From Hemiscyllium ocellatum (lineage: Eukaryota), in NCBI RefSeq assembly GCF_020745735.1, contig NC_083403.1, forward strand, positions 66,683,003-66,747,002: DNA of 64,000 nt, in the 5' to 3' direction. The translations under genes and the position numbers were made by a program. The notes beneath the pieces were generated by a model, which did no database searches, was not told where the DNA came from, and saw only the letters and a program-made list of their open reading frames with translations. This document shows, piece by piece, positions 6,532 to 59,768 of this stretch (position 1 is the first letter of the stretch; every line of letters begins with the position of its first letter).

Positions 6532-6992
6532 AGTTAAAAATCACACAACACCAGGTTATAGTCCAACAGGTTTAATTGGAAGCACACTAGCTTTCGGAGC
6601 GATGCTCCTTCATCAGGTGGTAGTGGAAGGCTCATATGTTGACATATGTTGACAATTGTCTAGCTATCACATTGTTAACAGCTACCCCGAGAATGCAACT
6701 TTTTAAAAAAAAGTTTTGTGATTTACACATGAAAGAAGTGAAACTATCACTGTATTCTAACAGATGAAAGGCTTAACAGACAATCAATTTTTTAATGTAT
6801 AATTTCAGTTACATCACACTGTAAATTTTTGCTATAAATTCTGTGTGTTAGGATTGAGCCCTTCACTATCACCTGGTGAAGGAGCATTGCTCCAAAAGCT
6901 AGTGTGCTTCCAATTAAACCTGCTGGACTATAACCTGGTGTTGTGTGATTTTTAACTTTGTACACCCCAGTCCAACACCGGCATCTCCAAAT
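6532..6992. mobile_element. PLE 3'-end insertion (family B) with an inverted copy of its own end; a hammerhead motif on each strand
   Basis: 6532-6633 is the reverse complement of ~6857-6958. 12-bp TSD tatgtgaaacaa at 6520-6531 and 6993-7004. The minus-strand hammerhead is intact (cac CTGATGA a ggagc atc gctcc GAAA gc ta gtg); the plus copy is mutated. Confidence 0.85.
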
Positions 6993-8809: not shown

Positions 8810-9720
8810 AAAAGTTGGCAAATGGAGTAAAACGTGGAAAAACATGAAATTGTTTATTCATGAAAAACATGAATATTGTTTAAAAAGGTAGAACCTGTAG
8901 GAAGGCGCTTGGGGATACTTATACATGTAACATAGAAAGCTAGCACACATGTGGAGCAGGTAAATAGGAAAGCTAATGGAAGGTTGACCCTTATTTAAAA
9001 GGGGGCTGGAGTATAAGAGTAAGGAAGTCTTACTGCAACTGTATAAGATGATGTTGTGAGCAGTTTTGGTCCCCTTGTTTAAGGAAAGTTATTATCTCAT
9101 TGGAGCTAGTTCAGAGGAGGTTCACTGGAACGATACGAAAAACAAAAAGTGTTGGAAATCACAATGGGTCAGACAGCATCCATGATTTCCAACAGTTATG
9201 ATTTCCAACACTTTTTGTTTCTAGTACTGATTTCAACACCTGCAGTAACTTGCTCCTTCACTGGAATGGTCTCTGTTATGGAGGGCTTGTCTTATGAACA
9301 TAGATTAAACAGGGGTTGGCACTCTACTCACTGCAGTTTAGAAGAATGAGAGGTGATTTCATTGAAACATATTGGATTCTTAATGGGCTTGACAGGATAA
9401 ATGCTGAGATGATCTTTCCCCTCATGGGAGACCAGAGGGAATAATCTTAAAATAAAGAAATGCCAGTTTAAGACAGAGAAGAGGAGGGAGGGCTTTCTTC
9501 TCTCTGAGGGTTGTGAGTCTTTGGAACTCCTTGCCACAGACAGTTGTGGGAACAGAGGCCTTGTGTATATATAAGACTGAGATAGATTCTTCATCAGTAG
9601 GGGAATTAAGGGCTGTGGGGAAAAAGCAATGTAAAGAATGTCAGTTCAGCCATAATCCTATGAATGGTGGAACAGGTTCGAGGGGCCAAATGGCTTTTCC
9701 TGTTCCTATTTATTTTGGTC
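8810..9720 (+). mobile_element. CR1 LINE 3' fragment interrupted by an inverted PLE-end insertion (~9135-9256)
   Basis: MEGLSYEHRLNR and SLWNSLPQ motifs. The insertion is flanked by ttcactggaacgat (9121-9134) and ttcactggaatggt (9257-9270). Confidence 0.8.
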
Positions 9721-10571: not shown

Positions 10572-10775
10572 CAGGAGTCAAACAACACCGGGTTATAGCC
10601 CAACAGGTTTATTTGAAATCACAAGCTTTTGGTGCACTGCTCCTTCATCAGACTTGATGAGGATACAGCGCCCTGAAAGCTTGAGATTCTAAATAAACAT
10701 GTTGGACACAAACCTGGTGTTGTGTGACTCCTGGCCTTGCCCACTCCAGTCCAACACCAGCACCTCCACACCATT
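10572..10775. mobile_element. Older family-B PLE-end inverted pair with decayed hammerheads
   Basis: 10575-10650 is an inverted copy of ~10652-10730 and is homologous to the 6532 and 30838 elements. Confidence 0.75.
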
Positions 10776-14800: not shown

Positions 14801-14904
14801 CATTAAGCTGGGTTGCTTGTCAAATTAGCAACAGGATTATTAACAAGTCCAAACTCAGCTCATTCAACCGATAAGCAGGTATAAGAGTAATATAAAAATG
14901 AAGA

Positions 14905-15063
14905 ATTAAGAATGCTGGAAATCTGAAAAAAAGCAGAAAGTACTGGAGAAACTCAGTAGGTTTGTAGTTTTGATGAAGGGTCACTGGATTTGAAACATTA
15001 ACTCTGTTTTTCTTTCGACAGGTGCTGCCAGACATGCTGAGTTTCTTCAGCACTTTGATTTTG
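14905..15063. mobile_element. Old PLE-end element with inverted 5' part and decayed hammerhead
   Basis: ttgatgaagggtcactggatttgaaacattaac... at ~14970, preceded by the reverse complement of its own 3' end (gctggaaatctgaa...ctggagaaactcag). Confidence 0.65.
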
Positions 15064-15369
15064 TGGAAGCAGTTATAAGTGGTCTCTGGCTTCTGAGACC
15101 CTGTGATACATTGATCACTCATGTTTTCATTGGCACTTTCCTGGTTAATGTCTTGATTCTCATCGTCATTCTCAGGAGTTTGCTGTTGACCTCCGATTTT
15201 TTTCTCCATCAAAGATGTGGCTCTAGTTGTCAAAGGCACAATATGTCACAACAATGCAGGACAACTATCTGGCCTGTAATGCAAGGCCTTGTTGGAATAA
15301 TCCAGGCAGCAAAACCTCATCCTCAAGAGGTCTATGACCTATTACATAATAGCACTGGTCAAAGAGTGA

Positions 15370-17330: not shown

Positions 17331-19819
17331 TGTGATTAGAAAATGGGTACTTCACATTCTGCTTTTAAGTCCCTTGTTATTGACATTTGTTTCACTGACA
17401 TGACAAGGAGGCAATGCTCAATGACTGATTAAGAGTCCACATTTTCGGCTGTTAATGACTTGCCGATGAAGTGTAAATTGAAGACAGATTGGTGGTATTA
17501 GTTAATCAATGGAAGCATGATTACTGCAAATGTCCCTTGAGTAGAGGCTCAAAATCAAAGATGTTTCATTCCACTCCCCACCCCATGAATAAATATTAAC
17601 TTATTCTGTCCAATTAACACACTGTCGCAGATATTTTGTGAAGTATTGCACAGTGGAGTTAAGGTTCCAACTTTGTGTTCTTGTGTTTGAATACAAACTG
17701 TTTGTGATGTGAAAACTTTCCTCCATTCTCCCGGGTCCTTTTTGTATTGCTGTCCTTGTGATTACCATCACTAATCAGTCTCTCCCTGTTTAAAATAAGC
17801 CTTTTACTTTGCTACTATTGTGCCTACTTTATCCCCAGACACCTTGACTTTGGAAATTCTCCTGTCTTTGTTGGCTCCACACTCTCCCCATGTGAAGACC
17901 AGAGTTAAAATGACCTGATTGAATCCCCTACTTTGAAAGATGCTCAGTTCCTTCCCATTCACTATGAGATTCCACTCAATTGTCTGCAATTTCATCCAAG
18001 TACAGGGACCATTCCCTCAGCGACCCAGTACAATGAAGCCTATCTCTGATGTTGAATTGCCCGTACTTTAACTCCCATACCATTTGCATTTGCCCTGCAG
18101 GACTGACTTTGGCCTAATCCCCTAACTGCAAGAATACAGATCTCTGGACTCTGGTAGGATCAAGTGCCAGGCAGATTATTTGCTTGAACCATATGCAATG
18201 TGTTTGTTGATTAAACTGCTGGCATATGCTGCAGCAATGATATTGATGTAGTATCACGCTGTACAACCTCTACCTGACTAATGGATTGGCTGCTCAGCAC
18301 TCCCCACTGTCACAAGTCACCCGTCTCTCCCTCTGCGCTGTAACTGACTGCTTAAGACATTGTATGCTAATGAAACAATGTCATCCACAAAGAGGCTGAA
18401 TGCTCCCAAGTAAGCATTGAAGTCAGTGAGCACCATCAAAGCAAGCTAAATACCATAAGATGCCTGTGTTTATGTATACGTAAAGTGTAGATGCACAAGA
18501 TGTGTGACTCTCACTGGATGCAAAGTGAGCAGGCATGATGATGTGGTGAGGCTGGAGATTTATCAATGCCATGTTACATCGATAAAGGATTGAAGCTGAT
18601 AGTGAACATAGACCATTCAGGGATATTGTTCAGAAGAAGCAGTTGCATATTGACAAGGCAGGCATTCAATGAGTTGAAGTTGTCAGGCACCTACTCTATT
18701 TTCCTGTTAGTTTTGCACCTTCCACTTTCACACTGAAGGGAAGAAGAATTTGACATGAAATGTGAATAGGTTATGTTTGGGATATTGATGATATTGCAAA
18801 TATATAGAAATAGGCGAGTTACCACTCAAGGGTGAGATTGTCGTTTAAGGTTATGATAAAAAATTGTATGAGGTTTTCTGAATCAGATCTTTTAATTTTG
18901 TCCTGTTTAGTCTGCTCACTTGTCACACTCTCGCCGTGCCAGTGAGAGAAACTACCTTCCATATTTCAGATGGGAAAAACCATAATTATTTACGTCATCC
19001 ATTTTTATGGACAGCTCATATAAATACATAGTTCAATTGTGGCTAAAGACCTGATAACCAGATTTATATCAACATTGTGTCATGTCCAACAAAATGATGT
19101 TAAAATGTCATTCAAAGAAAGGCCTAGTAACAGTGATGTTTCATAAAGCATAATGTAAAGAAATATAATTTACAAGAACTTGCATTAGCATTGCTTTTAA
19201 AATAGTTGCTAAACATTGAAATCATTGATTCAGATCAACTCTACAGAGAATCTTCCATTAAAAATTTTCCATTCAACCTGTTCAGAGATGTTATTGCAGG
19301 ATTCGGGAGTAGGTGAGCCCTGAACCCAAGTTCCTTGTTCAGGAGTAGGGACACTACTGTTGGAGCACAAGAAGACCCCAAAACAAATCAAATAGAGAGC
19401 AGCAATCCTTCCTCATTCCTTGTTTTTTTTAAATAGTCCTTGTCCCACCTAAGTCCACAAACAAAACCTTGGAAAAACAGAAAGATGCCACATCGTCTTT
19501 ACAATAGCTTCAGCAATTATTTATGACTAATGTAAGTTGCATGCATGTGCACTGCACTAACATTTTTATTGCAGATTTCCAGCATCTGTAATATCTTGCT
19601 TTCATATCGTTGCATGTATTGTGTTAGATTTGCTAAACATCTTGCATGAAGTTCATGAAGAATCAATGGAAAGAAAGCTTGGGTCAGTGTATAGTGGGCA
19701 CCAATGTGATATTGTCTGTTTTGCAAATGTTGTAAGAGTAATCCTGGAAGGCAGAATTGCTTTATACACTAGTGTATCGGAGATCCTGTTACACGCAATA
19801 GCAAGTGTGCTGTTCTATA

Positions 19820-20705: not shown

Positions 20706-21553
20706 TAGGTTGGACTATTGTTTTACTTTAAAACTCTGTCTGGAAAATTCAAGATCAATATGAGAAATTTTAATCAGTTAGTTTGTAAAATATTTTACCA
20801 GACTCCATGAGCTACTTTTATAACAAATCAGGCTGCAGTTGAAGGAACTAATTAGCCTGCATTCTATTTCCTGATTGAAACAATTCTAAAGTTTAATTAG
20901 TTCAATGAAGCTAATGATGTCACAATATGGTTATAAATGTAAGAAGGGTCAGAGCTCAGCAAAGTCTGCACTTAGTAAAATTAAACACGACACTTAGAAT
21001 TACTCTGTAATTGAAGTGAAAAAGGTCTGCTTTATTTATCAAGTACCCATTAAGTGTAAAATCACATGTAGCGAGAACTGGGTGGTGTACCTCTGGGATC
21101 TGGGTCCAATCCAACTCAGACAGATGGAATGAAGGTTTCTTCTCTCCAGCGTTTGTTAAATGTTCTAATTGAAATTGAGTTTGAGCTAGTCCCCATGAGA
21201 TCCCAGTGGAAATTAATCAAAACTGCAAAACAAGCCCTCAGAACTGGCAAACTAAACACATGAAAAATTTGAAGTAAACATGTTATGTTTGTAACATTGT
21301 GAAGAGAATGGTCCAGATATTTTGATTGGGGTCAGTGGAATTCAATTTCGATAAATGCGAGGAGTTGCATTTTGGGAAAGCAAATCTTAGCAGGACTTTC
21401 CACTTAATGCTAACATCCTAGGGAGTGTTACTGAACAAAGACACCTTGGAGTGGAGGTTCATAGCTCCTTGAAAGTAGAGTCACAGGTAGATAAGATAGT
21501 GAAGAAGACTTGCTTTCCTTTATTGGTCAGAGTATTGAATATAGGGTTGGGAG

Positions 21554-21714
21554 CAGGAGAATCGATGTTTCAGGCATGTGCCCTTCTTCCTGAAGAAGGG
21601 CTCATGCCTGAAACATCGATTCTCCTGCTCTTTGGATGCTGCCTGACCTGCTGCGCTTTTCCAGCAACACATTTTCAGCTCTGATTTCCAGCATCTGCAG
21701 TCCTCACTTTCTCC
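21554..21714. mobile_element. Family-A PLE-end insertion with ~40 bp inverted 5' arm and hammerhead motif (CTGAAGA core)
   Basis: gagcaggagaatcgatgtttcaggcatgtgcccttcttc pairs with gaagaagggctcatgcctgaaacatcgattctcctgctc. TSD tatagg-gttgggag (21540-21553) and tataggagttgggag (21715-21729). Confidence 0.85.
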
Positions 21715-22158
21715 TATAGGAGTTGGGAGGTCATATTGCGGCTATACAGGATGTTGGTTCGGCCACTTTTGGAATATTGCATACAATTCTGGTCTCCTTC
21801 CTATCGGAAGGATGTTGTGAAACTTGAAAGGGTTCAGAAAAAATTTGCAAGGATGTTTCCAGGGTTAGAGAATTTTGAGCTATAGGGAGGGGTTAAATAG
21901 GCTGGAGCTGTTTGCCCTGGAGCGTCAGAGGCTGAGGGGTGACCTTATAGAGATTTATAATAGACAGAGTTTTTTCCCTGGGGTTGGGGAGTCCAGAATT
22001 AGAAAGCGTAGGTTTATGGTGAGAGGGAAAAGATATAAAAGAGACCTAAGGGCAACTTGTTCACGCAGACGATGCTGCATATAGAGAATGAGCTGCCAGA
22101 GGAAATGGTGCAGCATTCAGAAGGCATTTGGATGGGTGTATAAATAGGAAGGGTTTGG

Positions 22159-22288
22159 TTCCTGATGAAGGGCTTATGCTCGAAACGTCGAATTCTCTAT
22201 TCCTGAGATGCTGCCTAACCTGCTGTGCTTTGACCAGCAACACATTTGCAGCTGTGATCTCCAGCATCTGCAGACCTCATTTTTTACT
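22159..22288 (+). mobile_element. Solo family-A PLE end (~130 bp) with intact hammerhead core
   Basis: ttc CTGATGA a gggc ttat gctc GAAA cg tc gaa. Near-identical to the 3' end of the 54172-55406 PLE. Confidence 0.9.
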
Positions 22289-22718
22289 TGGAGGGCTATG
22301 GGCCAGCTGTTGGCAAATGGAACTAGATTGAGTTGGGATATCTGGTCAGTATGGACAAGTTGGACCGAAGGGTATGGTTCTGTGCTATGACTCGATTGTT
22401 GGCTCTGATCAGACTAAAAATGACTCCTTTGGTCAGTTTCTGTGTTAACAATTCCTGGATAGGGGCATCCTGTTATGAACCAGTCCAGGAATTCACAAGT
22501 GGAGATGTGTAGAAGATCTTTGTAGAAACCACATTGAAATGCACGGTTAGCCATGTTGCTAGTGTCTGTGAAAGGGTAAGTATTTCTGATGGGAAGGTGA
22601 TGGGAAATATAGAGGTAGGTGACTGAAGAGGTTGGGAAAGGTGAGTTTGCAATTCTGGTGAGATGAGGGAGAAATGTCGGATTGGGAAGAGGTATCATGT
22701 AGGGAAGGGGGTTTGGGT

Positions 22719-24860: not shown

Positions 24861-25610
24861 GGATGCACTGCCTGAAGGGCAATAGAGATGTATTTGATCA
24901 TGTATTTTGAAAGGCAACTTATTAATTGTTTGAAGAGAAAATAATTTACAAGTCCATGGAAAAAGGTGGAATTTGGATAATTTAAGATGATCTTACAAAG
25001 AACTGGTGTGGACATAACTGGCCAAATAGTCTTCTTCTGTTCTTTAATCGTTCAATGATTATGTTACCTCAAGGATATTTTCTTTCACCTCACATTTTGT
25101 CTGGTAAGATTATATTATAGAAATTCATCTAGACCATTTTTGAGTACTGTAGAAAGTCTATGAGTAAAACTCATCTCCCAAAGGGCTCAAGGAAGTTAAA
25201 AAATGGACCCCTGGCCTAAATATCATTTGAAATATGAGCTGTCACTGCCTGTCATGACTCTACAGACAATTCATGTCATGGAAATGTTGTGATTAAAATG
25301 ATTTTTTAAATCATATTTTGTACTCAAATTGGAGACAGAACACAATCTTCAATTAGCAAAAGGTTTCCTTTTCAAAGGAAACACTTGGGAACAATTACAG
25401 TAACTACTATTATATTGCACAATTCTCAAGCTTATTTTTACAATGTCTTTCTTGTTTAATCGATCACAGGTTCACATGTTCTAAGACTTTGTCAGAAAAA
25501 CTGAAGAAGTGGATGGTACATTAGCTGACAAGGTACAATAATGGAATAGGAACAGAAAGCAGAAAGTGATGATTATTGTACAATCTCTAGAGAGGTAATG
25601 GATATTATCA

Positions 25611-25792
25611 AGAGTGAAAGTGAGGACTGCAGATGCTGGAGATAAGAGTTGAGAGTGTGGTGCTGGAAAAGCACAGCAGGTCAGGCAACATCTGAGGAGC
25701 AGGAGATGAAGGGCATTTGCCCGAAACATTTATTCTCCTGCTCTTCGGATGCTGCTAGACCTGCTGTGCTTTTCTAGCACCACTCTCTTGAC
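25611..25792. mobile_element. Family-A PLE-end inverted pair
   Basis: The minus arm (25615-25705) is complementary to the plus arm (25706-25792). Decayed TSD aatggatattatca (25597-25610) and aatgaatattacca (25793-25806). Confidence 0.8.
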
Positions 25793-26716
25793 AATGAATA
25801 TTACCATTCCACTTAACTGATTTTGAGTTTTCTGATGATCATGCTTGCAATAAGTTCAACAGATAGTGCTTTTTTGTAATGTCATAAGAATAGATGGTAG
25901 TACCAAGTTTTTTGGTTAAGTGTCAGTTATAAGGAAAATAGAAGGGAAAAAAAAATGGATGTAGGAGCTTCCACAAGTAGTGAGTGAGTGTTGGTCCGTC
26001 AATGAGTGAGTCTGGGGAATTAATCATGGGAAGCAAGGAAACGGCCAAGACTTTGAGCAAATATTTACTATTTCACTTTATTGTAGAAGTATCCTAATGA
26101 TAACAGCAGAAAAATCAAGATACAAAAGTGATCAAAAAATTATCACCAGACAAAACAATTATGAAAACAATTGGAACTGAAAGCTGAAAAATCCCCTGGT
26201 GATGACAGATTGCACCCAAGGGCCTTAAATGATGTGATCATAATGACAATGTATGCATTGGTTGCTCAAAAGTCCCGAGATTCTCGAAAGTCCCTGTGGA
26301 TTGGAAAAGTACATAAGTTTTTTTTGTTTTCACTCATGGGACGTGGACATTTATTACCCGTACCTGGTGACAGTGAAGGAATGGCGAAAAATTTCCAAGT
26401 CAGGATGGTGATTGTCTTTGAGGGGAACTTACAGATGGTGGTGTCCCCACGTATCTGCTGCCCATGTCCTTAGATGGAAGTGGTGATGGGTTAGAAAGTG
26501 CTGTGAGGGAGTGAGATTTTAGGATTTTGAACTAGCGATATTGAAGGAATGGCAATGTACCTTGGCCTGTGTCTATAGGTGATGCACAGGCTTTGGGGCT
26601 TTAGGATGTGAGTTACCCACAGGTTTCCTCAGGCAGAAGTTTATCAGGCTCTGGGTGATGTGGTCTATGGCAGGATGAGTGATAGAATTGGGTGAGATGT
26701 TCAGCAAGGCTCATCT

Positions 26717-26990
26717 CAACTAGGACAAAGTGAGGATTGCAGATGCTGGTGATCAGACAGTGAGTGAAGAGCCATGCAGATGAAGTCTGGTCCAGTCCAT
26801 TAACGAGGCATGTGTCCCTAAGCACATAGTGTCCCAGCAGCAGCATTTCAATGATAATTGTTGGTGCAGATTGAGGTGCTGGATTAAAGCGTAAGAATTC
26901 CCGATGAAGAGCTTATACTCGAAAAACTGACTCTCCTGCTCCTTGAATGCTGCCTGATTGGCTGTACTTTCCCAGCACCACACATTTTGA
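26717..26990. mobile_element. Family-A PLE-end insertion enclosing ~135 bp of non-PLE sequence
   Basis: Inverted tip at 26725-26756 and a plus-strand arm with decayed hammerhead at 26897-26990. 12-bp TSD caaggctcatct at 26705-26716 and 26991-27002. Confidence 0.75.
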
Positions 26991-29205
26991 CAAGGCTCAT
27001 CTGAAAATCAAGATGCATCACATCCCATCATTTCTGCTTTTGTCAGGTGAAATGGAGAGATTCTCGCTCGGCAGCAGTGCATTCCCAATTAACGTTCATC
27101 ATTGCTTGTGAAAAGGCATGTTAATAAACCAACTCACCAATGGTCGTGATCTTAACAATCCAAACCAGTTATCAGAAAAACATGATATGGAGCCAGAGTG
27201 AGTTCTTGGCAGGTCCAACTCGCCACTTGCTGCAAAAGATGTTGGATATCTGGCGCCAAAGTCTCGGACACGCTTGGCCAATGGGTATTAGCCACACGTA
27301 TTCCACATCCATGGACAGTGGCAACTGACATGTACCAACCTATAAGTACTATCATTGCACATCTCCAATCCATATACAGGATGTTTCTGCACTTTAATCC
27401 ATCACCTCAATCTGCAACAACAATTATCTTAGGGACACATGCCTTGTTAATGGACTGGACAAGACTGCATCTTCACTCACTGTCATAGCACCCACTCATC
27501 CTGAACCTGCCTGGATGCCTACGATATCTCTGCTTTACATCACCTTTTTTGTGCTTTGTCCAGTCTGCCAGAGATACTACATGCCTGGGGCAAATGTCAA
27601 GATAAATGCAGGGTAGTTCCAAACTGACAGTGCTTTTCTGGGTGTGCAGCGAGCTTTTAAATATGGTCTAGCATCAGGATGGTGGTAAATTCCAGAATTT
27701 ATAAGGAATAGTGAAGTACTCTGGGCACAGAGTGTGATAAGATAGGCCAAAAAGCAAACTAAAATGTCAAATAATGCAGCAGGTTTGGTAAGATACGATG
27801 AGAAAACCCAAACAGCGATATTCATTCTGCTAAACCCTACGCAACTTACACTGAGACAAAGAAAACCCATAATATTTCGCCCCTAATCTTGACCTGCATC
27901 ATCAATATATGGAGGCTTCTGAGAGAGGTTTCAGCATCTCGTCCAGTCTCTGACTATCTGGAGACCAGGTTTATGCCAATAAATCTGAAAGTCAGCGTTG
28001 AGAAAATGTGTACCATAGAACTTTAATAGCTTTCATGTGGAGGACTGACCTTGGCAGTGGCCAGGGAAAGCTGGCCAAATTTTAATTATCAAATAATAAG
28101 CAACCTGCAAAAATGTAAGGGGGCTGAAGTATGTAAAAAAAAGTGAAAGTAGAAAATTGCTAACTGCCGAGAAGGCTGAAAAATCAACAATTGTATTCTT
28201 TGATAGGAATAATTTAGGCACACTAATATAGTTTCCATAATTTATTAGAACAACACAAAAATGTTCAGTTCAAAATGGCCCAAAAATGTAACATCATGTA
28301 TCAATTGATTTTGTGCAAATTGCATTAAAACTTCTAACCACAAATATGCACAAAAAGACTGTACATGTTAGAGTTTCTATAAATATAGCTGAAAGAAATT
28401 GTCCCAAGTACAGAAAAATCACTGAGCACAATATTCAAGAACATTTAGTTTAAGTTTGTTTTTCCAAAATTATGATAAATCTTACTTGTTTCACATTTTG
28501 AAATCTGTGAATTGCATTTGATAGTACAACCCGGTATTGCTTTGAGTCACCCATCATTTTAGAAACAGAGAGAGGAGGTGCAACAGGAGACAAGCTGGCC
28601 CTTTGAGCCTGCTCCAACACTCAATATGATCATGGCTGGTCATCCAACTCAGTACCCTGTTCCCACTTTCTCCCACATCCTCTGATCCATTTGGCCCAAG
28701 AACTATGTTTAAAACCTTCTTGAAAACATTCAATGTTTTGCCCTCAACCACTTTCTGCCACCGAGGAGTCTAGAGGCTCACTACTCGCTTGGAGAAGAAA
28801 TTTCTCCTCCTAGAGTCATATACAGATGTAGAGCACGGAAATCGACCCTTTGGTCCAACTCGTCCATGCTGACCAGATATTCTAACCCAATCTAGTCCCA
28901 CCTGCCAGCACTGGCCCATATCCCTCCAAACCCTTCCTTTTACTGTTGCAATTGTACCAGCCTCCACCACGTCCTCTGGCAGCTCATTCCATACACGTAC
29001 CACCCTCTGAGTGAAAAAGTTGCCCCTTAGGTCTCTTTTATATCTTTCCCCTCTCACCCTAAACCTATACCTCTAGTTCTGGACTCCCCCACACTAGGGG
29101 AAAGACTGTCTATTTATCCTATTCATGCCCCTCATGATTTTATAAACCTCTATAAGGTTTTCCATCAATCTCCGACACTCCAGGGAAAACAGCCCCAGCC
29201 TATTC

Positions 29206-29541
29206 AACCACACACGCAGATGACAAGTAACATGAATTCGACTGGGACAACACTAATATTATAGGACAAGCCAAACAGAGAACAGCCACGGAATTCCTAG
29301 AGGCATGGCACTCATCCACAGATTCAATCAATAAGCACATCGACCTAGACCCAATATACCAACCACTGCAGCGGACAGCTGGAACTGACAACTGGAAGCG
29401 GCAGAGACAAACCACTACAAATGCCGGAGGAAAGATCACAGAAGAGCTTCGCAGGAGGCTCCCAAGCACTGAGGATGTTACCTAGACAGGGGACGAAACG
29501 TCTGCAACACAAATTCTCTGCTCAGCGAACAGAACCACAAC
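29206..29541 (+). mobile_element. Second PLE family (Poseidon-like) 3' end: GIY-YIG C-terminus plus hammerhead (family C)
   Basis: Translation HEFDWDNTNIIGQAKQRTATEFLEAWHSSTDSINKHIDLDPIYQPL, followed by a hammerhead at 29466-29505. Confidence 0.85.
29466..29505 (+). ncRNA. Minimal type I hammerhead ribozyme, family C
   Basis: gca|CTGAGGA|t|gttacc-tagaca-ggggac|GAAA|cg|tc|tgc. Stem I is gca/tgc, stem II has one mismatch, and the cleavage triplet is GUC. Confidence 0.8.
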
Positions 29542-30837
29542 ATCCTTGTAAATTGTTTCTGAACCCTTTCAAGTTTCACAACATCTTTCTGATAGGTGGG
29601 AGACCAAAATTGCATGCAACATTCCAACAGTGGCCTACTCCATATTCTTAAACTGTGACCCCTGGTTCTAGGCTCCCTGGTCATCAGGAACATCCCTCCT
29701 GTGTTTAGCAATCTAGGCCTGTTAGAATTTTATAGGATCTATGAAACACTCTGAATATTCTAAACTCCAGCGAATATGATTATGACTCATCCAGTTTCTC
29801 ATCATATGTCAGACCTGCTCTCCTGGAAATTACTTTGAAAAACCTTTCTTGCGATAGCTCTACACCTAGAGCATCCTTTCTAACATGAGAAGACCTAAAC
29901 CTTATACAATAATCTAGGTATGATCTAATCTAGGCCTACAAAATTGCATCAAAACATCCTTGATCCTGTAGTCGAATCATCTCACTATGAAGACCAACAT
30001 ATGCTTGCTTCTTCCTTACCTGCTGCATCTCCAGCAGGTTTACCTCCAGTGAGTGATGTACAACGACACTAAGGTTCATTGCAGCTGGCCCTTTCCCAAC
30101 CTATTGTCATTCAGATAACCTACCTTCTTGTTTTTGCTACTAAAGTGGATAATCTCATATTTATCTACATAATAGTTCACCTGCCATGCATTTACCCACT
30201 CGACTTGTTTTGCAGCAGGAAAGAATAGCCTTTGTTGTTCAAAATGTCTTCACTGCTGAGAGATTGTGCATTCTGCCCAAGGGATTCAAAACCTATTCAT
30301 TCTGCAATTTACAAACTTTCAAATGATGTTTAGCCTAACTCCCAAGATAACACTTTGTCCTTCCAGTAATTTTGTATCCAACCAGTCTAACAATTTGCAC
30401 AGACAAGTAAACGTAGCTGAAATATTTGTTATCCTGACAAATATACAACAAAGATCAAATTGTTTTCCTGCCCCTGCCTCGTACAAAAATCTGTATAATT
30501 GGATTTCAATAACACCATAAAAACTCTGCACGGGTGACTGCACATTTTCTTTTCAAGTTAGAGTGGAGGCAACATGTCCTTTACAGCATTGACTTCCAAA
30601 GCTAACTGCAACCATGTACAGAACTGTTTTCAGGATCGTTGTATCATGCAATGTCCTCATTGTGTACCTGCAACATTTAGTTTTGAAAGTTTAGAATGAT
30701 TTAAAACTGTGATTGAATGTGGCACATTCTTAGACACTGATAATGACCTATTATGGAAAAAGATAGAGTCATAGAAAATGCCCTTAGGCCTATTGAGTCT
30801 GCTCCAGTCAATAACAAGCAAACTGACTATTCTAATG

Positions 30838-31060
30838 ATTTGGAGATGCTGGTGTTGGACTGGGGTATAAAACGTTAAAAATCACACAACACCAGGTTAT
30901 AGTGCAACAGGTTTAATTGGAAGCACACTAGCTTTCGGAGCGATACTCCTTCACCAGGTGATTGTCCAGATGTTGATCACCTGATGAAGGAGCGTCGCTC
31001 CGAAAGCTAGTGTGCTTCCAATTAAACCTGTTGGACTATAACCTGGTGTTGTGTGATTTT
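30838..31060. mobile_element. Family-B PLE-end tail-outward inverted pair
   Basis: 30877-30962 is the reverse complement of 30976-31061. TSD tgactattctaatg (30824-30837) and tgactattataatg (31061-31074). Confidence 0.9.
30978..31012 (+). ncRNA. Minimal type I hammerhead ribozyme, family B (intact)
   Basis: cac|CTGATGA|a|ggagc-gtc-gctcc|GAAA|gc|ta|gtg. Perfect 5-bp stem II, palindromic AGCT stem III, CUA cleavage triplet. Confidence 0.85.
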
Positions 31061-34000
31061 TGACTATTATAATGCCATCTTCCAGCAATTGGGCCATAGC
31101 CGTTGGCAAGTACACATCTAAGTACCTAAATGTCATGAGGCATCTGCGTCCAACACTCATGTGGGCAATGAATCCTACATTACTACTACCCTCTGGGTGA
31201 AAATATTTTTCCTTACATCTCCTCTATGTCCTCTGCCCCTTACTTAACTCTATTCCCACCCCCCATCCCTCAATCAAGGGGAAAAGGAACTGCCTTAAAA
31301 TTGCATGGCTCTCCTCATAACTCTGTCTGCATTCTTGCAATGATTGCTACCAATTTTGTGTAGGATCCTGAGAAAGGTGGCTCAGATATACACTTGTTCC
31401 AGAGGGATAGTACAGTGAAATAACTGTTACAATGAGATCCTGGATGAGGATTCTCAATTTATTTTGTTTCCAGATGGTATATTTGAAAACTTGCAAATTC
31501 CTGGGTGGGGAGGTATAAAAAGCTTATCATCCTTAATCACCTGCACCCCCCACTCCCCACCCCACAACCTCTCCCCCCCACCCTCCTTGTTTGTTTGCAT
31601 GAAGGTTCTTTACAAAGGATCTCCTCCGTTTCTCTCAGAATAAAAAAAAGTTTAGAAAAGGAGACTTTTTAATCTGTTTCTTGAGTTGACCAAGAATGAA
31701 TTTCTAAATGCAAGATGAAATTAATACTGAAACACAAATTGGAAAATATGAAGTGAGTCCAAGAAAAGATAAACGTTAACAGATATATTAATCAGTCTCT
31801 GAGTTTTTCATAGAACATTGACACTGAGCACTTAGCTTTGAGATTCTTGGCTTTGTAGGTTAGTTAAAATTATCTTGCCCTGTTGACTTGCTTACTGACT
31901 GGCCTCCAGGACTCAGAGTTGGTGAATCCTTTACGTGCTGGGGTGACCAGTGGCTGGTTCTTCAACTGTGACTTTTACAGCATACTTAGCCTTGAACCCA
32001 AGCTCGTGCACACAACCAGCTCAGCTCAAAAACACTTTTAACTCCAACCATTATGTATTCTTTAAAACAGGAACATGTCTCTCGGTCACATTGCTGCCTT
32101 TTCTCCCATCACATTCGCAGTCAGATATTCTCAAAGGACATTACAGTGCAATTTGAACTGTGTTTTGTCCTTTGAATGTTCCTTGACACCTTCAGATATG
32201 CAATTCACGTGTTCCTCTTCAGATAGTTACTGAATTTACATCAATAATCGACTGTTGGCTGTACCAGCCAAGTAATTACATGTTGTAAGTAAAAATTTCA
32301 TTATATTCATAGGTAATCCAGGTCTCTGAGCCACGGTCGTGACATCAGGATGAAGTGAGTAGCAGGGAAACAGCCCACACATTTTTTGTTCAGTGGAGAA
32401 TTAAGAATGAGCCCATTTTGCTTGCAAGCACTCTTTCGGGCAAAAAAGAAAGGCCCAGCTAAAAGTGTGGTACAGCAGTAAATACGTTAAAAATGTCTTT
32501 ATTGTTAATGGCAACTCCACTGTAATTGCAATATTCAAAATAAACAGTGTTCTCTTTTGACTCCCACTTACTTCGATTCTTGACTGGGGATATGCATTGC
32601 CAAAAGTTTTCAAAGCAAACAGCAGATAAGGATAAATTCTTGAAACAAAAGGAACGTAGGTGATACAACAGGCTTAGTTTTATATAGCTGTAGCAACAAG
32701 CTGTCAAAGCAAGGAACTGCAAATGATACTTTACTTGGACAACTGACTTAGAATTCTGATCTCATGACCAAATAATTCTACCCTTACATGAAGTGGAGGA
32801 ACATGAATATGAGAAGTCAATAATATAAAATGTTAGTACTTTCTTTCCTTTTGTCATAAATTAGCACACTGCTTTTTTTCTTCTATTGCTAGTTCTTTTT
32901 AACTACAGTGATACAGTTCCTCTTAGCATTTTTGACTGGTACATGTTCCATCTAATGTGAGATTAAAGGAAGTAAGGATTGCTCATTTTACTGCATGAAA
33001 AAAATGTTACAATGAACACTGTACCTAATCCAAAACAAAATCAGCATGTGCCTTATCAATAAGTAATGGTTCCAACACGTCTGCACTTCCCTCTGTATAA
33101 TGGTGAACTAGCAATTCAAGTGGTCTTCGGAATCTATGTAAATCAATTCACTAGCATTTGGAATAGGATTAGACTTAATCAAGTTACTTAGGATGGAATT
33201 TTCCTCAATGGTGTTATCATTTATGAAGTTTCTCAACCAATTTGAAAGCACACTTAAGATGTTCCTTTTATCTTCAATATTCACTGCTGCACTTTTTAAA
33301 AACTTATTTTAACTCTTTAATGTCAAATATCTGTATTTTAGTTTCAAATTGGTGTTAGGTTTTCCTCATTTAATTGCTTTTTATTCTGCTGTATTATCCT
33401 TACATTATCTAGCAGGTAGTTATTTCAGCTAGTTTTCCTGTTGGGGTTGCAAAGTGTATTTATCCCACCTTCACATAACACAACAGTTAGAACTGGAATC
33501 TCCTACACCCAAACTTAGTATTGTCATTTCTGTGAACAACCTTGGTTCTTTATTTGAGTAATCTCTGAGAGATCTGTTAGTGGTGATTAGCATGTCTGTG
33601 TTTGTCAGTGGATCATTTGATATCCACTTCTGTTGGTTCTTTCTGAATTGAGGCCTGAATTTTCACAATGGCAGCAACCTTCATAATGGGTACAAAGGGT
33701 GAAGGGAGTAGATATAGGGGAATTGGTCAGCGTGCAGGGTATGAAGAGCCATAGGTATTGTGTGTGGGTGAGAGGGGTGAGTGTTGTTGTTTGCCTATTC
33801 ATGGCAGAATTATTTTAAAAAGTCCTGCATCCTATCTTGATGTTAGGCATGTCTTGCTCCTTTTATGTTTTTCACATGTGGCAGGGTGAGTTTCTCACTA
33901 AGCAATTGCTAATTCAGGGGGGTTATTGTTTGTGAATTTCTTTGTTATCAGCCCGCCTTGCCTGATCAATATTCAGCTATTTTACCAAACTGGCCAAACA

Positions 34001-40665: not shown

Positions 40666-41721
40666 GCGGAAAAATATTAAATTTATGTTGGAGTTCCCTA
40701 GCACTGAACAGATGAAGGCGTCTGCAACAACCCTCTGCCACCACATTGGGTGCAACTAGTTATCTAAGCACAAAACTGGTGTCAAACTTTGAATGTTTCT
40801 GATTACGTGCAGTTAAGCATTGTGCTACAGAGTGCATTTAACAACTACATCATGGGGGCAATTGTAACATAGTTTATTAAACTTACTTTAATACCAAATA
40901 TTCTGCAATTGGTTTCAAAAATTATTTTTGCTCAGCTATGCTTACATTCTTGTGTATACTTACTGTATACTCTGGGTAGTGTTGGAACATTTCACACAAT
41001 ATTAACCTTACCAGTAACTGAAGAAGATTTACAAGACGTAGTGAGATTAAATCATTTTAAAGATATGGTTCCAGTATTCACTAGGTCATTCTATTGTAGG
41101 TATGAGGCTGTTAATTTGCAATGTCTAGACAAAAAGCCATAAAAACAACATCACCTATAGATCGCTAAGAAGTTAGACTTTATATCAAACTGTCAAACTA
41201 GGCTTGTGAATGGACTGGTAATAAGTATTCTCTGACTGTGTTACAGATTTCCAATACGATGGGAGTCGAGGATGTCTATTAAATATTTTTATATCCATGG
41301 TGATAGCTCATAATCATTTTCACCTTATTTTATTGGATTTCTTCTGACTGAGAATGAAGAAACTTGTTCTCTATTTTGATACAAAATAACTACCTGAGTT
41401 ATCCAAGTATTGGGAATGAGCTCAGTGGTAGGGATGGTAATAGAAAATCAACATGAAGACATTGAATTGGAAGCTCAAGCTCTTCATATTGCTTCCATAC
41501 TTTCCCTCCATTGGCTAACATGATAGGAGAACATCACAATAGAAATGTAGTTAGAGCAATTCATTGACCAATTGAGAGGAATTATTCAAAGATTTTTCAA
41601 TTTTGCAAACAATGCTTGGGGAATCACAGGGTTTCAGAGTCTAGCCTGGTAAAATAAGCTGGTAAACAAATGAAAACTCAATACAGCCTGCTTCAGGAAG
41701 CCATTGACAGATCCAGGAAAT

Positions 41722-41850
41722 TTCCTGAAGAAGGGCTCATGCCCGAAACGTCGATACTCCTGCTCTTTGGATGCTGCCTGACCTGCTGCGCTTTTCTAGC
41801 AACACATTTTCAGCTCTGATTTCCAGCATCTGCAGTCCTCACTTTCTCCT
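41722..41850 (+). mobile_element. Solo family-A PLE end with intact hammerhead core
   Basis: ttc CTGAAGA a gggc tcat gccc GAAA cg tc ga, followed by the family-A tail to ctcactttctcc. Confidence 0.88.
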
Positions 41851-42859
41851 GAGAAAAGAGTATGTTTACTTTGGTTGCCATGGAAACTGAGAGAGGTTCT
41901 CTGCCTGGGTTTTATTCATCAAGGCTCCAGAATCCCATTGAAGTGGAAGGGCAGGGAAAAGAAGCAAAGTCCAGACATAGGCAACAAGAGATTGGCAATC
42001 TTAAGGTTAACAGAAGGCCTAGGTCAGGGAGGGATGCAGAAAAAGGCAACAGTGGGCAAAACAACCAGCCTCCTCAGTTCAATTTAGGATATCTTCCAGA
42101 GTTAATCCACCTTTCAAAGCTCAGTTACCTCCAAATGTCTGACAACATTGGCTCTGTCATGGTGACAGATCAGAACATCAAAGTACTGATAGACACATAG
42201 TCATGATCCACTGGGATACAGCATCTTAAATCAAGCCCTGATATTCCCAGAGTTGTACAAAATATTAACTTTTTTTAAGGTTAGGTACAGTACCCCATTT
42301 TAACTGCCTTGCAAACCAAGGTTGATAGAAAGCAAGAATCATGCTTCTGTATTAGAAAAAGACTATAGCTACAAGTAAACAGATACAAGTCATAAAACAC
42401 TATTAAAACTGTACTAAAACTTGAATCCCCTTATAAACTTCTTGTTACACCAGCAGACACACACACACACATATTATTGTAGATGGAGCAAAAAATGGGA
42501 ATTCCAGTGTTGAGATGATCTGTTTTTGGCTAGCCAGGCCCTTTTTGTTGGTTGTTTTTCTCTGAAAGCTTTCACTGACTTTAAGAAGTTCAGAGTGAAT
42601 GATTCACTTGAAACATTTCTTTGATTTATCAATTCAAAAGGTACAGCTCACAGAAGCAGCTGCAGGAAAGGTAATTGGTCTTGCTGAAGTTGAAACTGAG
42701 TTTATTTACTGCAGAGAACAGGTGGGGAAAACAACAACACACTTTTCTATGCTTATCTCTCTCTCTGCCTGTGTCTTGGTAACTTGTTTCCAGTTCCAAA
42801 CTGCTCAGTTAGCTGAGAACCAATCTGCTTCACTTGTAAACAATTCCGCAGCTTCTGTC

Positions 42860-45980: not shown

Positions 45981-47255
45981 CGAGTAAAAAATGAGGTCTG
46001 CAGATGCTGGAGATCATAGCGGAAAATGTGATGCTGGTTAAAGCACAGCAGGTTAGGCAGCATCTCAGGAATAGGGAATTCGACGTTTCGAGCATAAGCC
46101 CTTCATCAGGAATGAGAGAGAGTAGCCAAGCAGGCTAAGATAAAAGGTAGGGAGGAGGGACTTGGGGGAGGGGCAATGGAGGTGGAAGGAGGTCAAGGTG
46201 AGGGTGATAGGCCGGAGTGGGGTGCGGGCGGAGAGGTCAGGAAGAGGATTGCAGGTTAGGAGGGCGGTGCTGAGTTGAGGGAACTGACTGAGACAAGGTG
46301 GGGGGAGGGGAAATGAGGAAACTGGAGAAATCTGAATTCATACCTTGTGGTTGGAGGGTTCCCAGGCGGAAGATGAGGCGCTCCTCCTCCAGCCGTCGTG
46401 TTGTTATGTTCTGCCGGTGGAGGAGTCCAAGGACCTGCATGTCCTCGGTGGAGTGGGAGGGAGAGTTGAGCCACGGGGTGATTGGGTTGGTTGGTCCGGG
46501 CGGCCCAGAGGTGTTCTCTGAAGCGTTCCGCAAGTAAGCGGCCTGTCTCCCCAATATAGAGGAGGCCACATCGGGTGCAGCGGATGCAATAGATGATGTG
46601 TGTGGAGGTACAGGTGAACTTGTGGCGGATATGGAAGGATCCCTTGGGGCCTTGGAGGGAAGTGAGTGTGGAGGTGTGGGCGCAAGTTTTACATTTCCTG
46701 CGGTTGCAGGGGAAGGTGCCGGGGGTGGAGATTGGGTTGGTGGGGGGTGTGGATCTGACTAGGGAGTCACGAAGGGAGTGGTCCTTGCGGAACGCTGATA
46801 GGGGAGGGGAGGGAAATATATCCTTGGTGGTGGGGTCCATTTGGTGGTGGCGGAAATGACGGCGGATGATACGTTGTATGCGGAGGTTGGTGGGGTGGTA
46901 GGTGAGAACCAGTGGGGTTCTGTCTTGGTGGCGGTTGGAGGAGCGGGGCTCAAGGGCGGAGGAGCGGGAAGTGGAGGAGATGCGGTGGAGGGCATCGTCG
47001 ATCACGTCTGGGGGGAATCTGCAGTCCTTGAAGAAAGAGGCCATCTGGGCTGTGTGGTGTTGGAACTGGTTCTCCTGGGAGCAGATGCGGCAGAGACGAA
47101 GGAATTGGGAATATGGGATGGAGTTTTTGCAGGGGGCAGGGTGGGAGGAGGTGTAGTCCAGGTAGCTGTGGGAGTCAGTCGGTTTATAATAGATGTCTGT
47201 GTTGAGTCGGTCGCCCGAGATAGAGATGGAAAGGTCTAGGAAGGGGAGGGAGACT
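45981..47255 (-). mobile_element. Penelope-like retroelement, Neptune-type, 5'-truncated
   Basis: 262-aa ORF with GTFPCNRRKCKTC and IIYCIRCTRCGLLYIGETG...RFREH. Intact hammerhead at 46078-46113 (minus strand). Confidence 0.95.
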
Positions 47256-54171: not shown

Positions 54172-55406
54172 GCTGAAAACAGCTACCTGGACTACACCTC
54201 CTCCCACCCTGCCCCCTGCAAAAACTCCATCCCATATTCCCAATTCCTTCGTCTCCACCGCATCTGCTCCCAGGAGGACCAGTTTCAACACCGCACAGCC
54301 CAGATGGCCTCCTTCTTCAAGGACCGCAGATTCCCCCCAGACGTGGTCGACGATGCCCTCCACCGCATCTCCTCCACTTCCCGCTCCTCCGCCCTTGAGC
54401 CCCGCTCCTCCGCCCTTGAGCCCCGCTCCTCCAACCGCCACCAAGACAGAACCCCACTGGTTCTCACCTACCACCCCACCAACCTCCGCATACAACGTAT
54501 CATCCGCCGTCATTTCCGCCACCTCCAAACGGACCCCACCACCAAGGATATATTTCCCTCCCCTCCCCTATCAGCGTTCCGCAAGGACCACTCCCTTCGT
54601 GACTCCCTCGTCAGATCCACACCCCCCACCAACCCAACCTCCACTCCCGGCACCTTCCCCTGGAACCGCAGGAAATGTAAAACTTGCGCCCACACCTCCA
54701 CACTCACTTCCCTCCAAGGCCCCAAGGGATCCTTCCATATCCGCCACAAGTTCACCTGTACCTCCACACACATCATCTATTGCATCCGCTGCACCCGATG
54801 TGGCCTCCTCTATATTGGGGAGACAGGCCGCTTACTTGCGGAACGCTTCAGAGAACACCTCTGAGCCGCCCGGACCAACCAACCCAACCACCCTGTGGCT
54901 CAACACTTTAACTCTCCCTCCCACTCCACCGAGGACATGCAGGTCCTTGGACTCCTCCACCGGCAGAACATAACAACATGACGGCTGGAGGAGGAGCGCC
55001 TCATCTTCCGCCTGGGAACCCTCCAACCACAAGGTATGAATTCAGATTTCTCCAGTTTCCTCATTTCCCCTCCCCCCACCTTGTCTCAGTCGGTTCCCTC
55101 AACTCAGCACAGCCCTCCTAACCTGCAATCTCCTTACTGACCTCTCCGCCCCCACCCCACTCCGGCCTATCACCCTCACCTTGACCTCCTTCCACCTATC
55201 ACATCTCCATCGCCCCTCGCCCAAGTCCCTCCTCCCTACCTTTTATCTTAGCCTGCTTGGCTACTCTCTCTCATTCCTGATGAAGGGCTTATGCTCGAAA
55301 CGTCGAATTCCCTATTCCTGAGATGCTGCCTAACCTGCTGTGCTTTAACCAGCAACACATTTTCAGCTGTGATCTCCAGCATCTGCAGACCTCTTTTTTT
55401 TACTCG
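54172..55406 (+). mobile_element. Penelope-like retroelement, Neptune-type, 5'-truncated, with 14-bp TSD
   Basis: Cys linker plus GIY-YIG ORF at 54304-54864 (premature stops follow). TSD taaatctgtaaaca at 54158-54171 and 55407-55420. Confidence 0.95.
55273..55308 (+). ncRNA. Minimal type I hammerhead ribozyme, family A (intact)
   Basis: attc|CTGATGA|a|gggc-ttat-gctc|GAAA|cg|tc|gaat. Palindromic ACGT stem III and GUC triplet. Confidence 0.85.
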
Positions 55407-56270: not shown

Positions 56271-56364
56271 AAAGACACAGAATCTATAGCAAAAGATCAC
56301 AGTATCATGTAATTAAGATGATATATTGAACAAACCTAGATAGCTGTTAAGTCTTTCATCTTTT

Positions 56365-57540: not shown

Positions 57541-57589
57541 ATTTTAGTCTCACCTACCTACCACTTTAGAGTGGATTGCAGGTTTCAGA

Positions 57590-57712
57590 ACTGGAATTCT
57601 GTGTCTTATGGTCCTGCTCCACAGCTACCTGATGAAGGAGCTGCACTCTGAAACCTAATACTTCCAAATAAACCTGTTGGACCATGACCTGGTGTTGTGT
57701 GATTTTTAACCT
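57590..57712 (+). mobile_element. Solo family-B PLE end with decayed hammerhead
   Basis: acCTGATGAaggagctgcactctGAAAcctaatac...cctggtgttgtgtgatttttaac. Confidence 0.8.
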
Positions 57713-59632: not shown

Positions 59633-59633
59633 T

Positions 59634-59768
59634 TATGATCCTGCCCCACTTGTTGCCTGATGAAGGAGCAGTGCTCTGAAAGCTAGTACTTCCTTTGGAC
59701 TATAATCTGGTGTAGTGTGTTTTTTAACTTTGTCCACCCCAATCCAACACTGACATCTCCACATCATG
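59634..59768 (+). mobile_element. Solo family-B PLE end with near-intact hammerhead core
   Basis: gcCTGATGAaggagcagtgctctGAAAgctagtac...ccaacactgacatctccacatc. Confidence 0.8.

What the first reader, a model, noticed from the sequence alone, without database searches (positions are those of the whole stretch)
30824..31074. Ribozyme-bearing PLE ends inserted as tail-outward inverted pairs within one target-site duplication
This 223-bp insertion has no coding sequence. It consists of two copies of the family-B 3' end, head-to-head, with 3' tails pointing outward, inside a 14-bp TSD (13/14 match). The same design recurs at 6532-6992, 9135-9256, 10572-10775, 14905-15063, 21554-21714 and 25611-25792, across different families and ages. 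The two arms overlap in sequence, unlike classical L1 twin priming where the arms are non-overlapping. Inference: both nicked target strands primed cDNA, on two RNAs or twice on one. A hammerhead-mediated RNA dimer would be a natural way to deliver two templates to one cut. Inverted pseudo-LTRs are known for PLEs, but these minimal palindromic ribozyme-SINE-like products look like a distinct abundant class.
Basis: partly seen in the sequence, partly recalled or inferred. Interest (0 to 1): 0.75.

Follow-up and report, generated by a model that had tools for sequence, protein, structure and literature searches.

The report
Head-to-head truncated Penelope insertion pair
This 223-bp palindrome is two 5'-truncated end pieces of a Penelope-like retrotransposon, each with a minimal hammerhead motif, joined head to head in one insertion event. 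This is a documented by-product of how this transposon class integrates, not a new class of element.

Summary
Positions 30838-31060 are a non-coding palindromic insert between 14-bp target-site duplications (13/14). Contigs from two related species carry the empty site, one missing exactly 237 nt (223 + 14).

All six other listed loci are head-to-head pairs with significant TSDs. I found an eighth at 26720-26990. The window shows 8 head-to-head, 0 tail-to-tail and 0 tandem juxtapositions, against about 0.8 head-to-head expected by chance.

The arms are Penelope-like element (PLE) 3' units. Family A continues into GIY-YIG endonuclease ORFs, and the ribozyme motif meets the published PLE min-hammerhead criteria.

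In 7 of 7 complete pairs, exactly one arm carries the ~35-nt "tail". The other arm ends at the internal site also used by solo copies. In four pairs each arm holds sequence the other lacks, so neither is a copy of the other.

This supports cDNA priming from both nicked strands, which has been shown in vitro for a PLE (Frangieh 2024). Head-to-head inverted pLTRs within one TSD and a one-sided tail are already described (Arkhipova 2013; Craig 2021).

The "distinct class" claim and the hammerhead-dimer delivery idea are not supported. This scan noted the same design elsewhere in this genome (s1-147182, s1-178366).

The parts
30824..30837 (.). Left copy of the target-site duplication (TGACTATTCTAATG)
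   Evidence: family D2. Score test. Present once in the empty-site contigs of organisms B and C.
30838..30877 (-). One-sided PLE 'tail' of about 36-40 nt, the terminal extension of the left arm. It contains the CCAGCATCTCC motif shared with the tails of families A and D.
   Evidence: L-only 3' sequence. alignment with the tail-bearing copies 6849-6992, 10658-10768 and 59640-59764.
30838..30965 (-). Left arm: family-B PLE 3' unit with tail. Its hammerhead core at 30933-30957 is mutated (CTGGTGA).
   Evidence: nhmmer E = 2.4e-37.
30963..30975 (.). 13-nt junction spacer between the arms, not clearly assignable to either arm
30976..31060 (+). Right arm: family-B PLE 3' unit without tail, ending at the internal start site (...GTGTGATTTTT)
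   Evidence: E = 3.6e-29. It ends within 4 nt of the ends of the no-tail copies 6533-6630, 10572-10657 and 57627-57714.
30981..31005 (+). Intact minimal type-I hammerhead core: CTGATGA, an extra A, a 5-bp helix II, GAAA, then the AGCT palindrome and predicted cleavage after the A (...GAAAGCTA|G)
   Evidence: Criteria taken from PMC4209133.
31061..31074 (.). Right copy of the target-site duplication (TGACTATTATAATG)
6533..6992 (.). Family-B pair. Left arm 6533-6630 has no tail and right arm 6849-6992 has the tail. A 218-bp filler between them includes a LINE 3'-end fragment. TSD is TATGTGAAACAA (12/12).
9132..9255 (.). Family-E pair inside a LINE copy. Left arm has no tail and right arm has the tail. 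TSD is TTCACTGGAA (10/10).
10572..10768 (.). Old family-B pair with arms 81% alike. Left arm has no tail and right arm has the tail. The TSD is decayed, about 12-17 bp.
14887..15065 (.). Family-D pair. Left arm is short and has the tail. Right arm is long, runs from the hammerhead, and has no tail. TSD is AAGCAGGTATAAGAGT (13/16).
21551..21715 (.). Family-A pair inside a LINE copy. Right arm is complete with tail. Left arm is only a 39-nt internal fragment, 97% palindromic, with a 2-nt centre (snap-back-like). TSD is 14-15 bp.
25612..25792 (.). Family-A pair. Left arm has the tail and starts about at the hammerhead cleavage site. Right arm has no tail and starts in the hammerhead core. TSD is 12/14. 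The pair is present in organism B.
26720..26990 (.). Left arm is about 50 nt (tail plus a few bases). A 120-bp filler follows. Right arm has no tail. The arms barely overlap. TSD is CAAGGCTCATCT (12/12), extending to 14/15.
45981..47252 (-). 5'-truncated autonomous family-A PLE. The ORF at 46256-47044 has a CxxC linker and GIY-YIG motifs, followed by a hammerhead at 46086-46109 and a tail-bearing 3' end.
54183..55406 (+). 5'-truncated autonomous family-A PLE, a solo copy with tail and its own TSD TAAATCTGTAAACA. A GIY-YIG ORF lies at 54304-54864.

Best explanation
The insert is one integration event of a Penelope-like element (PLE).

1. The PLE endonuclease made staggered nicks 14 bp apart, which later became the TSD.
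2. Both 3'-OH ends primed reverse transcription of family-B PLE RNA.
3. One cDNA began at the outer start site and so includes the ~35-nt tail. The other began at the internal start site just upstream of the tail.
4. Both cDNAs stopped a few bases upstream of the hammerhead core.
5. The two cDNAs were joined head to head with a 13-nt filler, and repair completed the duplex.

Shown here: element identity, single event, TSD, empty site, the two kinds of terminus, and recurrence above chance. Inferred: the order of events, the joining step, and whether one RNA or two served as template.
For: **Identity.**
- The arms match solo and ORF-linked copies.
- Family A runs into GIY-YIG ORFs.
- The hammerhead motif shows the extra base between positions 9 and 10.1, the G10.1-C11.1 pair, and palindromic ACGT or AGCT at helix III. 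Helix II differs between families while staying paired. These are the PLE min-HHR criteria of PMC4209133.

**Single event.**
- One TSD flanks both arms.
- Both arms are absent together in two related species, with a clean 237-nt skip.
- Both samples of the window's own species carry the insert.

**Two primings.**
- 7 of 7 complete pairs have one tail end and one internal-site end. Solo copies use both termini: 5 with tail, 3 without.
- In the 9.1k, 14.9k, 25.6k and 26.7k pairs the tail arm is the shorter one, while the other arm extends further 5'. Each arm therefore holds sequence missing from its partner.
- Every junction differs, so the pairs were made anew each time.

**Literature.**
- A purified PLE protein nicks and extends both strands and starts at two sites that bracket the tail.
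Against: - In the focal pair itself the two arms reach the same 5' point. The no-tail arm could therefore be a fold-back copy of the tail arm that stopped at the tail boundary.
- The 21.5k pair is best read as such a fold-back, so that route exists.
- Two independent primings do not by themselves predict the strict one-tail rule. With 5 of 8 solos tailed, 7 of 7 mixed pairs has P of about 0.005, so some coupling remains unexplained.
- No autonomous family-B element is in the window.
- Rfam finds no hammerhead at the gathering or E-value thresholds.
- Self-cleavage was not tested.
Confidence: 0.68

Rival explanations
1. Snap-back self-priming. A single tail-bearing cDNA, made from one nick, folded back at its 3' end and copied itself. 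Synthesis stopped at the protein-bound tail region, and the end was joined to the other target strand.
For: - The focal pair and the 10.6k pair are near-perfect palindromes with centres of 3-13 nt.
- The 21.5k pair has a 2-nt centre and an internal-only short arm.
- Arkhipova 2013 proposed self-priming from palindromic junctions.
Against: - It cannot make the 9.1k, 14.9k, 25.6k or 26.7k pairs, where the tail sits on the shorter arm and the other arm extends further 5'.
- It needs an ad hoc stop within 4 nt of the site that solo no-tail copies use as their end.
Confidence: 0.2
2. A palindromic master copy is transcribed as a hairpin RNA and retrotransposed whole, so the inverted design is inherited rather than made at each insertion.
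For: The design recurs in several families.
Against: - All eight pairs have different junction positions, arm lengths and fillers, even within family B.
- A hairpin template would give identical junctions.
Confidence: 0.03
3. Two separate insertions. A second family-B copy landed in inverted orientation beside the first.
For: - The families are extremely abundant. K-mer depth over the arms is about 1e5 times that of the flanks.
- The arms differ at 4 of 85 positions, slightly more than the ~3.3% divergence between the window's species and organism B. This excess is not significant (P about 0.3).
Against: - One TSD brackets both arms and no inner TSD exists.
- Both arms are absent together in organisms B and C.
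- The window has 8 head-to-head and 0 tail-to-tail or tandem adjacencies.
Confidence: 0.03
4. A MITE or foldback DNA transposon with terminal inverted repeats.
For: The insert is palindromic, has a TSD and has no ORF.
Against: - The two termini are unequal, one with the tail and one without.
- TSD length varies from 10 to 17 bp between copies.
- The same unit occurs as solo copies and as the 3' end of GIY-YIG ORF-bearing PLEs.
- Arm lengths differ at every locus.
Confidence: 0.02

Closest known systems
Canonical EN+ Penelope-like element insertion architecture: inverted 5'-truncated copy or pLTR, one TSD, optional one-sided 30-40-bp tail (Arkhipova et al. 2013, PMC3846280; Craig et al. 2021, PMC8557442)
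   Same: Head-to-head inverted copies inside one TSD of variable length, a tail on only one arm, a palindromic junction, a hammerhead in the repeat, and heavy 5' truncation.
   Different: Both copies here are truncated to 85-130 nt, so no ORF or direct pLTR remains. Family B has no autonomous partner in the window.
PAc (Poseidon of Anolis carolinensis) in vitro system (Frangieh et al. 2024, PMC11167929)
   Same: Both target strands are nicked and extended. Reverse transcription starts at two adjacent internal sites that bracket the tail. The hammerhead lies about 60-100 nt upstream of the start sites.
   Different: That study did not recover joined head-to-head products. Here only the genomic end products are seen, and they add a strict one-tail-per-pair pattern.
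L1 twin priming (Ostertag and Kazazian 2001; from my own knowledge, not re-read here)
   Same: The second nicked strand also primes cDNA, giving an inverted 5' segment within one TSD.
   Different: In L1 the second priming is internal and the arms are non-overlapping parts of one RNA. Here both primings start in the 3' terminal region, so the arms usually overlap. The 26.7k pair, with almost no overlap, is the closest to the L1 pattern.
Animal non-LTR retrozymes and PLE-derived non-autonomous hammerhead repeats (Li et al. 2026 bioRxiv 10.64898/2026.07.22.740005; Cervera and de la Pena 2014)
   Same: Short non-coding hammerhead-bearing units related to PLE pLTRs, present in high copy number.
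   Different: Retrozymes are defined by tandem head-to-tail arrays. The window has no tandem juxtaposition. These are dispersed inverted pairs and solo copies.

Membership tests
Penelope-like element (EN+ PLE) insertion | Autonomous members encode a GIY-YIG endonuclease, with an upstream CxxC linker, next to the RT | tested here: met
   For family A, the ORFs at 46256-47044(-) and 54304-54864(+) hit Pfam GIY-YIG (E = 1.6e-4 and 4.7e-4, just under the curated cutoff). The translation shows the CxxC linker, IIYCIRC and LLYIGETGR motifs. The RT part is truncated away in these copies. For family B, the focal family, no ORF-bearing copy is in the window.
Penelope-like element (EN+ PLE) insertion | Minimal type-I hammerhead in the terminal repeat: extra base between positions 9 and 10.1, G10.1-C11.1, palindromic 15.x-16.x (PMC4209133) | tested here: met
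   Families A, B and D all carry CTGATGA-A-G...C-GAAA followed by ACGT or AGCT. Helix II differs between families but stays paired. Rfam models do not detect it. Cleavage activity was not tested.
Penelope-like element (EN+ PLE) insertion | Optional 30-40-bp tail at only one end of the insertion unit | tested here: met
   7 of 7 complete pairs have exactly one tail. Solo copies occur with and without it.
Penelope-like element (EN+ PLE) insertion | Inverted 5'-truncated copy abutting head to head, with the whole unit inside one TSD of variable length | tested here: met
   Eight pairs with TSDs of 10-17 bp, each significant against random flanks. Empty sites are shown.
L1-type twin priming product | Inverted arm primed internally, arms being non-overlapping segments of one RNA, and a poly(A) end | tested here: not met
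   Arms overlap by 28-102 nt in 7 of 8 pairs. There is no poly(A). Both outer ends lie in the 3' terminal region.
Non-LTR retrozyme | Tandem head-to-tail hammerhead repeats able to give circular RNA | tested here: not met
   No tandem adjacencies among 24 arms in the window. Circular RNA could not be tested.
MITE / foldback DNA transposon | Equivalent terminal inverted repeats and a TSD of fixed length | tested here: not met
   The termini are unequal (tail against no tail). TSDs range from 10 to 17 bp.

The most novel reading that the evidence does not exclude
The strict pattern of one tail per pair suggests the two primings are coupled on a single RNA. In the four asymmetric pairs the tail arm is never the longer one, which fits the same idea. 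A PLE protein dimer seated on the tail stem-loop would hand each nicked target strand to one of the two start sites that bracket the tail. The tail-side cDNA would then trail behind the other. This would be a defined two-ended integration mechanism special to PLEs.
Probability: 0.22. Interest if true: 0.55.

Novelty: already known. Interest (0 to 1): 0.25.

Why it matters
The insert shows that a shark-type genome is packed with minimal PLE by-products. The window holds 16 PLE-end insertions in 64 kb, half of them inverted pairs. Such pairs break short-read contigs and could mimic MITEs or miRNA hairpins in annotation.

The asymmetric pairs give genomic support for both-strand priming, so far seen only in vitro. 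They argue against fold-back copying as the general route. This is an incremental point for PLE specialists, not a new kind of element.

Tried and rejected
- **Rfam.** No hammerhead family matched at the gathering threshold on the whole window or at E up to 10 on 30780-31120. Only generic miRNA-hairpin matches appeared, far below their gathering scores. These are expected for any palindrome and I reject them as miRNA evidence.
- **nhmmer.** Profiles of families A, B and D/E added only two doubtful old fragments, at 623-684 and 19560-19590. No larger sample was available in the window.
- **One versus two templates.** The focal arms differ at 4 of 85 positions. At most about 2.8 differences are expected from the ~3.3% divergence to the species with the empty site (P about 0.3). 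The test is inconclusive.
- **RNA folding.** Folds of tail-bearing units show a long-range stem between the tail and upstream sequence. Z-scores of -1.2 to -2.0 are not significant.
- **Large inverted pair.** I tested whether the inverted 1.2-kb PLE copies at 45981-47169 and 54179-55406 form one giant pair. This is rejected, because the + copy has its own TSD.
- **Literature.** No paper in the held library links PLEs with twin priming.
- **Searches skipped.** I ran no large protein search because Pfam and visible motifs settled the ORF identity.
- **Expression.** No run on record as RNA holds the stretch, so expression was not tested.
Full report
**1. What is at the coordinates**

Positions 30838-31060 form a 223-bp palindromic insert. 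The arms at 30874-30962 and 30976-31064 are 94% complementary, with 13 nt between them. A 14-bp direct repeat with 13/14 matches sits at 30824-30837 and 31061-31074. No random flank pair from the window scored above this TSD (P = 0.0025). No ORF of 150 aa or more overlaps the insert. The window contains no N.

**2. What the arms are**

Read 5' to 3' with their outer ends as 3' ends, both arms match family-B copies elsewhere in the window: 6533-6630, 6849-6992, 10572-10768, 57627-57714 and 59640-59764.

Each unit begins with a hammerhead-type core, in this order:
- CTGATGA
- one extra A
- a 5-bp helix II
- GAAA
- the palindrome AGCT
- a predicted cleavage site after the next A

Families A and D have the same layout with a different helix II and with ACGT followed by C or T. 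These are the features Cervera and de la Pena list as diagnostic for PLE minimal hammerheads: a base between positions 9 and 10.1, the G10.1-C11.1 pair, and palindromic 15.x-16.x (PMC4209133). Rfam models do not detect the motif, and cleavage was not tested.

Family A units continue upstream into ORFs with a CxxC linker and GIY-YIG motifs at 46256-47044(-) and 54304-54864(+). These belong to three 1.2-kb 5'-truncated PLE copies. The repeats are therefore Penelope-like element ends. Family B has no autonomous copy in the window.

**3. The arms are not equivalent**

The left arm ends with about 36-40 nt that the right arm lacks. The right arm stops at ...GTGTGATTTTT. That is within 4 nt of where the no-tail copies 6533-6630, 10572-10657 and 57627-57714 stop.

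This matches the PLE "tail", described as a 30-40-bp extension present at only one end of an insertion (PMC8557442; PMC3846280). It corresponds to the sequence between two reverse-transcription start sites mapped in vitro (PMC11167929).

**4. Recurrence**

| Pair | Family | Arm with tail | TSD | Note |
|---|---|---|---|---|
| 6533-6992 | B | right | 12/12 | 218-bp filler |
| 9132-9255 | E | right | 10/10 | inside a LINE copy |
| 10572-10768 | B | right | decayed | arms 81% alike |
| 14887-15065 | D | left | 13/16 | tail arm short |
| 21551-21715 | A | right | 14-15 bp | left arm is an internal 39-nt fragment |
| 25612-25792 | A | left | 12/14 | present in organism B |
| 26720-26990 | A | left | 14/15 | 120-bp filler, not listed by reader |
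| 30838-31060 | B | left | 13/14 | focal insert |

Eight solo copies also exist, five with the tail and three without.

Among the 24 arms there are 8 head-to-head, 0 tail-to-tail and 0 tandem adjacencies. Random placement gives a mean of 0.8 head-to-head and never reached 8 in 20,000 trials. No pair mixes families.

**5. Single event and empty sites**

I laid contigs of four public runs on 25400-31300.
- An 854-nt contig of organism B (about 3% diverged) is contiguous from window 30832 to 31070. It skips exactly 237 nt, which is the insert plus one TSD copy.
- A 7.7-kb contig of organism C has 65 letters where the window has 301.
- Both samples of the window's own species have contigs that run from the flanks into each arm.
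- The 25.6k pair is present in organism B. At least the right arm of the 26.7k pair is present in B and C.

Paralogous LINE copies lack the 21.5k and 9.1k pairs and carry their TSD sequence once. No single-arm state was seen at any locus.

**6. Mechanism**

*Fold-back versus two primings.* In four pairs (9.1k, 14.9k, 25.6k, 26.7k) the tail sits on the shorter arm, while the no-tail arm extends further 5', into or up to the hammerhead. Each arm therefore contains sequence absent from its partner. In the 26.7k pair the arms barely overlap. Neither arm can be a fold-back copy of the other, and a later DNA-level inverted duplication is excluded.

*Other alternatives.* Junctions differ at every locus, which excludes a palindromic master copy. 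Unequal termini and TSDs of 10-17 bp exclude a TIR transposon.

*Best reading.* Both outer ends coincide with termini that solo copies also use. The best reading is target-primed reverse transcription from both nicked strands, followed by head-to-head joining that sometimes includes filler. This agrees with the in vitro finding that a purified PLE protein cleaves and extends both strands, with no difference in start-site choice between strands.

*Limits.*
- The focal pair and the 10.6k pair are symmetric, so they remain compatible with fold-back synthesis that stops at the tail boundary.
- The 21.5k pair, with an internal-only arm and a 2-nt centre, is most simply a fold-back product.
- Independent primings do not explain why 7 of 7 complete pairs are mixed. 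With 5 of 8 solos tailed, the chance is about 0.005.
- They also do not explain why the tail arm is the shorter one in 4 of 4 asymmetric pairs. This hints at coupling on a single RNA, but the sample is small.

**7. The hammerhead-dimer idea**

Arm 5' ends cluster 0-20 nt upstream of the CTGATGA box, not at the predicted cleavage site. The tail arm of the 25.6k pair is a possible exception. [quoted passage not shown] In an inserted pair, any transcript carries one sense and one antisense ribozyme, which would pair with each other.

The test for two templates was inconclusive. The focal arms differ at 4 of 85 positions against at most about 2.8 expected (P about 0.3).

**8. Comparison with what is known, and novelty**

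The following are all published PLE features:
- head-to-head inverted pLTRs completing an insert inside one TSD
- a tail on one of the inverted repeats
- palindromic junctions
- heavy 5' truncation
- hammerheads in the repeats

Both-strand extension and two start sites are published as well. The shark-type copies are extreme truncation products of that design, not a separate class, and they are not retrozymes because no tandems occur.

Two earlier notes of this scan on other parts of the same genome describe the same design. One follow-up there reached the same verdict, and I tested the claim independently here. The small addition from this work is the genomic argument, from the asymmetric pairs, that favours two primings over self-priming.

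**Verdict.** The feature is already known in kind, and interest is low to moderate.

Noticed in passing
window 6700-6848, 57550-57626, 58729-59633: Every family-B copy that reaches the unit's 5' end (about 17-20 nt upstream of CTGATGA) is directly preceded by the 3' end of a LINE in the same orientation. The LINE-X-like fragment at 6700-6848 matches 56272-56365(-). Part of the 218-bp filler of the 6.5k pair is such a fragment. This suggests either template switching from the PLE RNA 5' end to a LINE RNA 3' end, or source copies lying downstream of LINEs.
   Followed up: partly
window 58221-58658: This stretch is self-reverse-complementary (73% over 456 nt). It lies in the RT region just upstream of the LINE C copy at 58729-59633, and may be an inverted 5' junction of a LINE insertion.
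   Followed up: no
window 22159-22290: A solo family-A unit of 132 bp starts exactly at TTCCTGATGA and carries the tail. It sits inside a LINE C copy with at most a 4-bp duplication (TTGG), so not all insertions make long TSDs.
   Followed up: partly
window 19560-19590 and 560-705: The first is a tail-only fragment (...GATTTCCAGCATCTG...). The second is an old family-D-like copy with an ambiguous tail-like piece to its left. Both are too decayed to classify.
   Followed up: partly
window 31061 joined to 25616 in other genomic copies: In 12-25 contigs per DNA run, and 2 in X15, a family-B no-tail end is followed directly by the tail end of an inverted family-A unit (table 5). This mixed tail-to-tail juxtaposition elsewhere in the genome may reflect insertion next to existing PLE ends.
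   Followed up: no
window 30838-30975(-), 41713-41852(+), 55265-55406(+): Predicted RNA folds pair the tail motif (CAACACCAG or CAGCAUCU) with sequence 30-50 nt upstream. This places the internal start site in the loop, which recalls the stem-loop start site reported for PAc. Z-scores are weak, from -1.2 to -2.0.
   Followed up: partly
window 25597-25793, 28749-29733, 30719-31112: Contig k-mer depth over PLE units and a neighbouring repeat is 1e4 to 1e5 times that of the unique flanks in all four runs, which cover three species. These families are among the most abundant repeats in these genomes. Depth is not a copy number.
   Followed up: no
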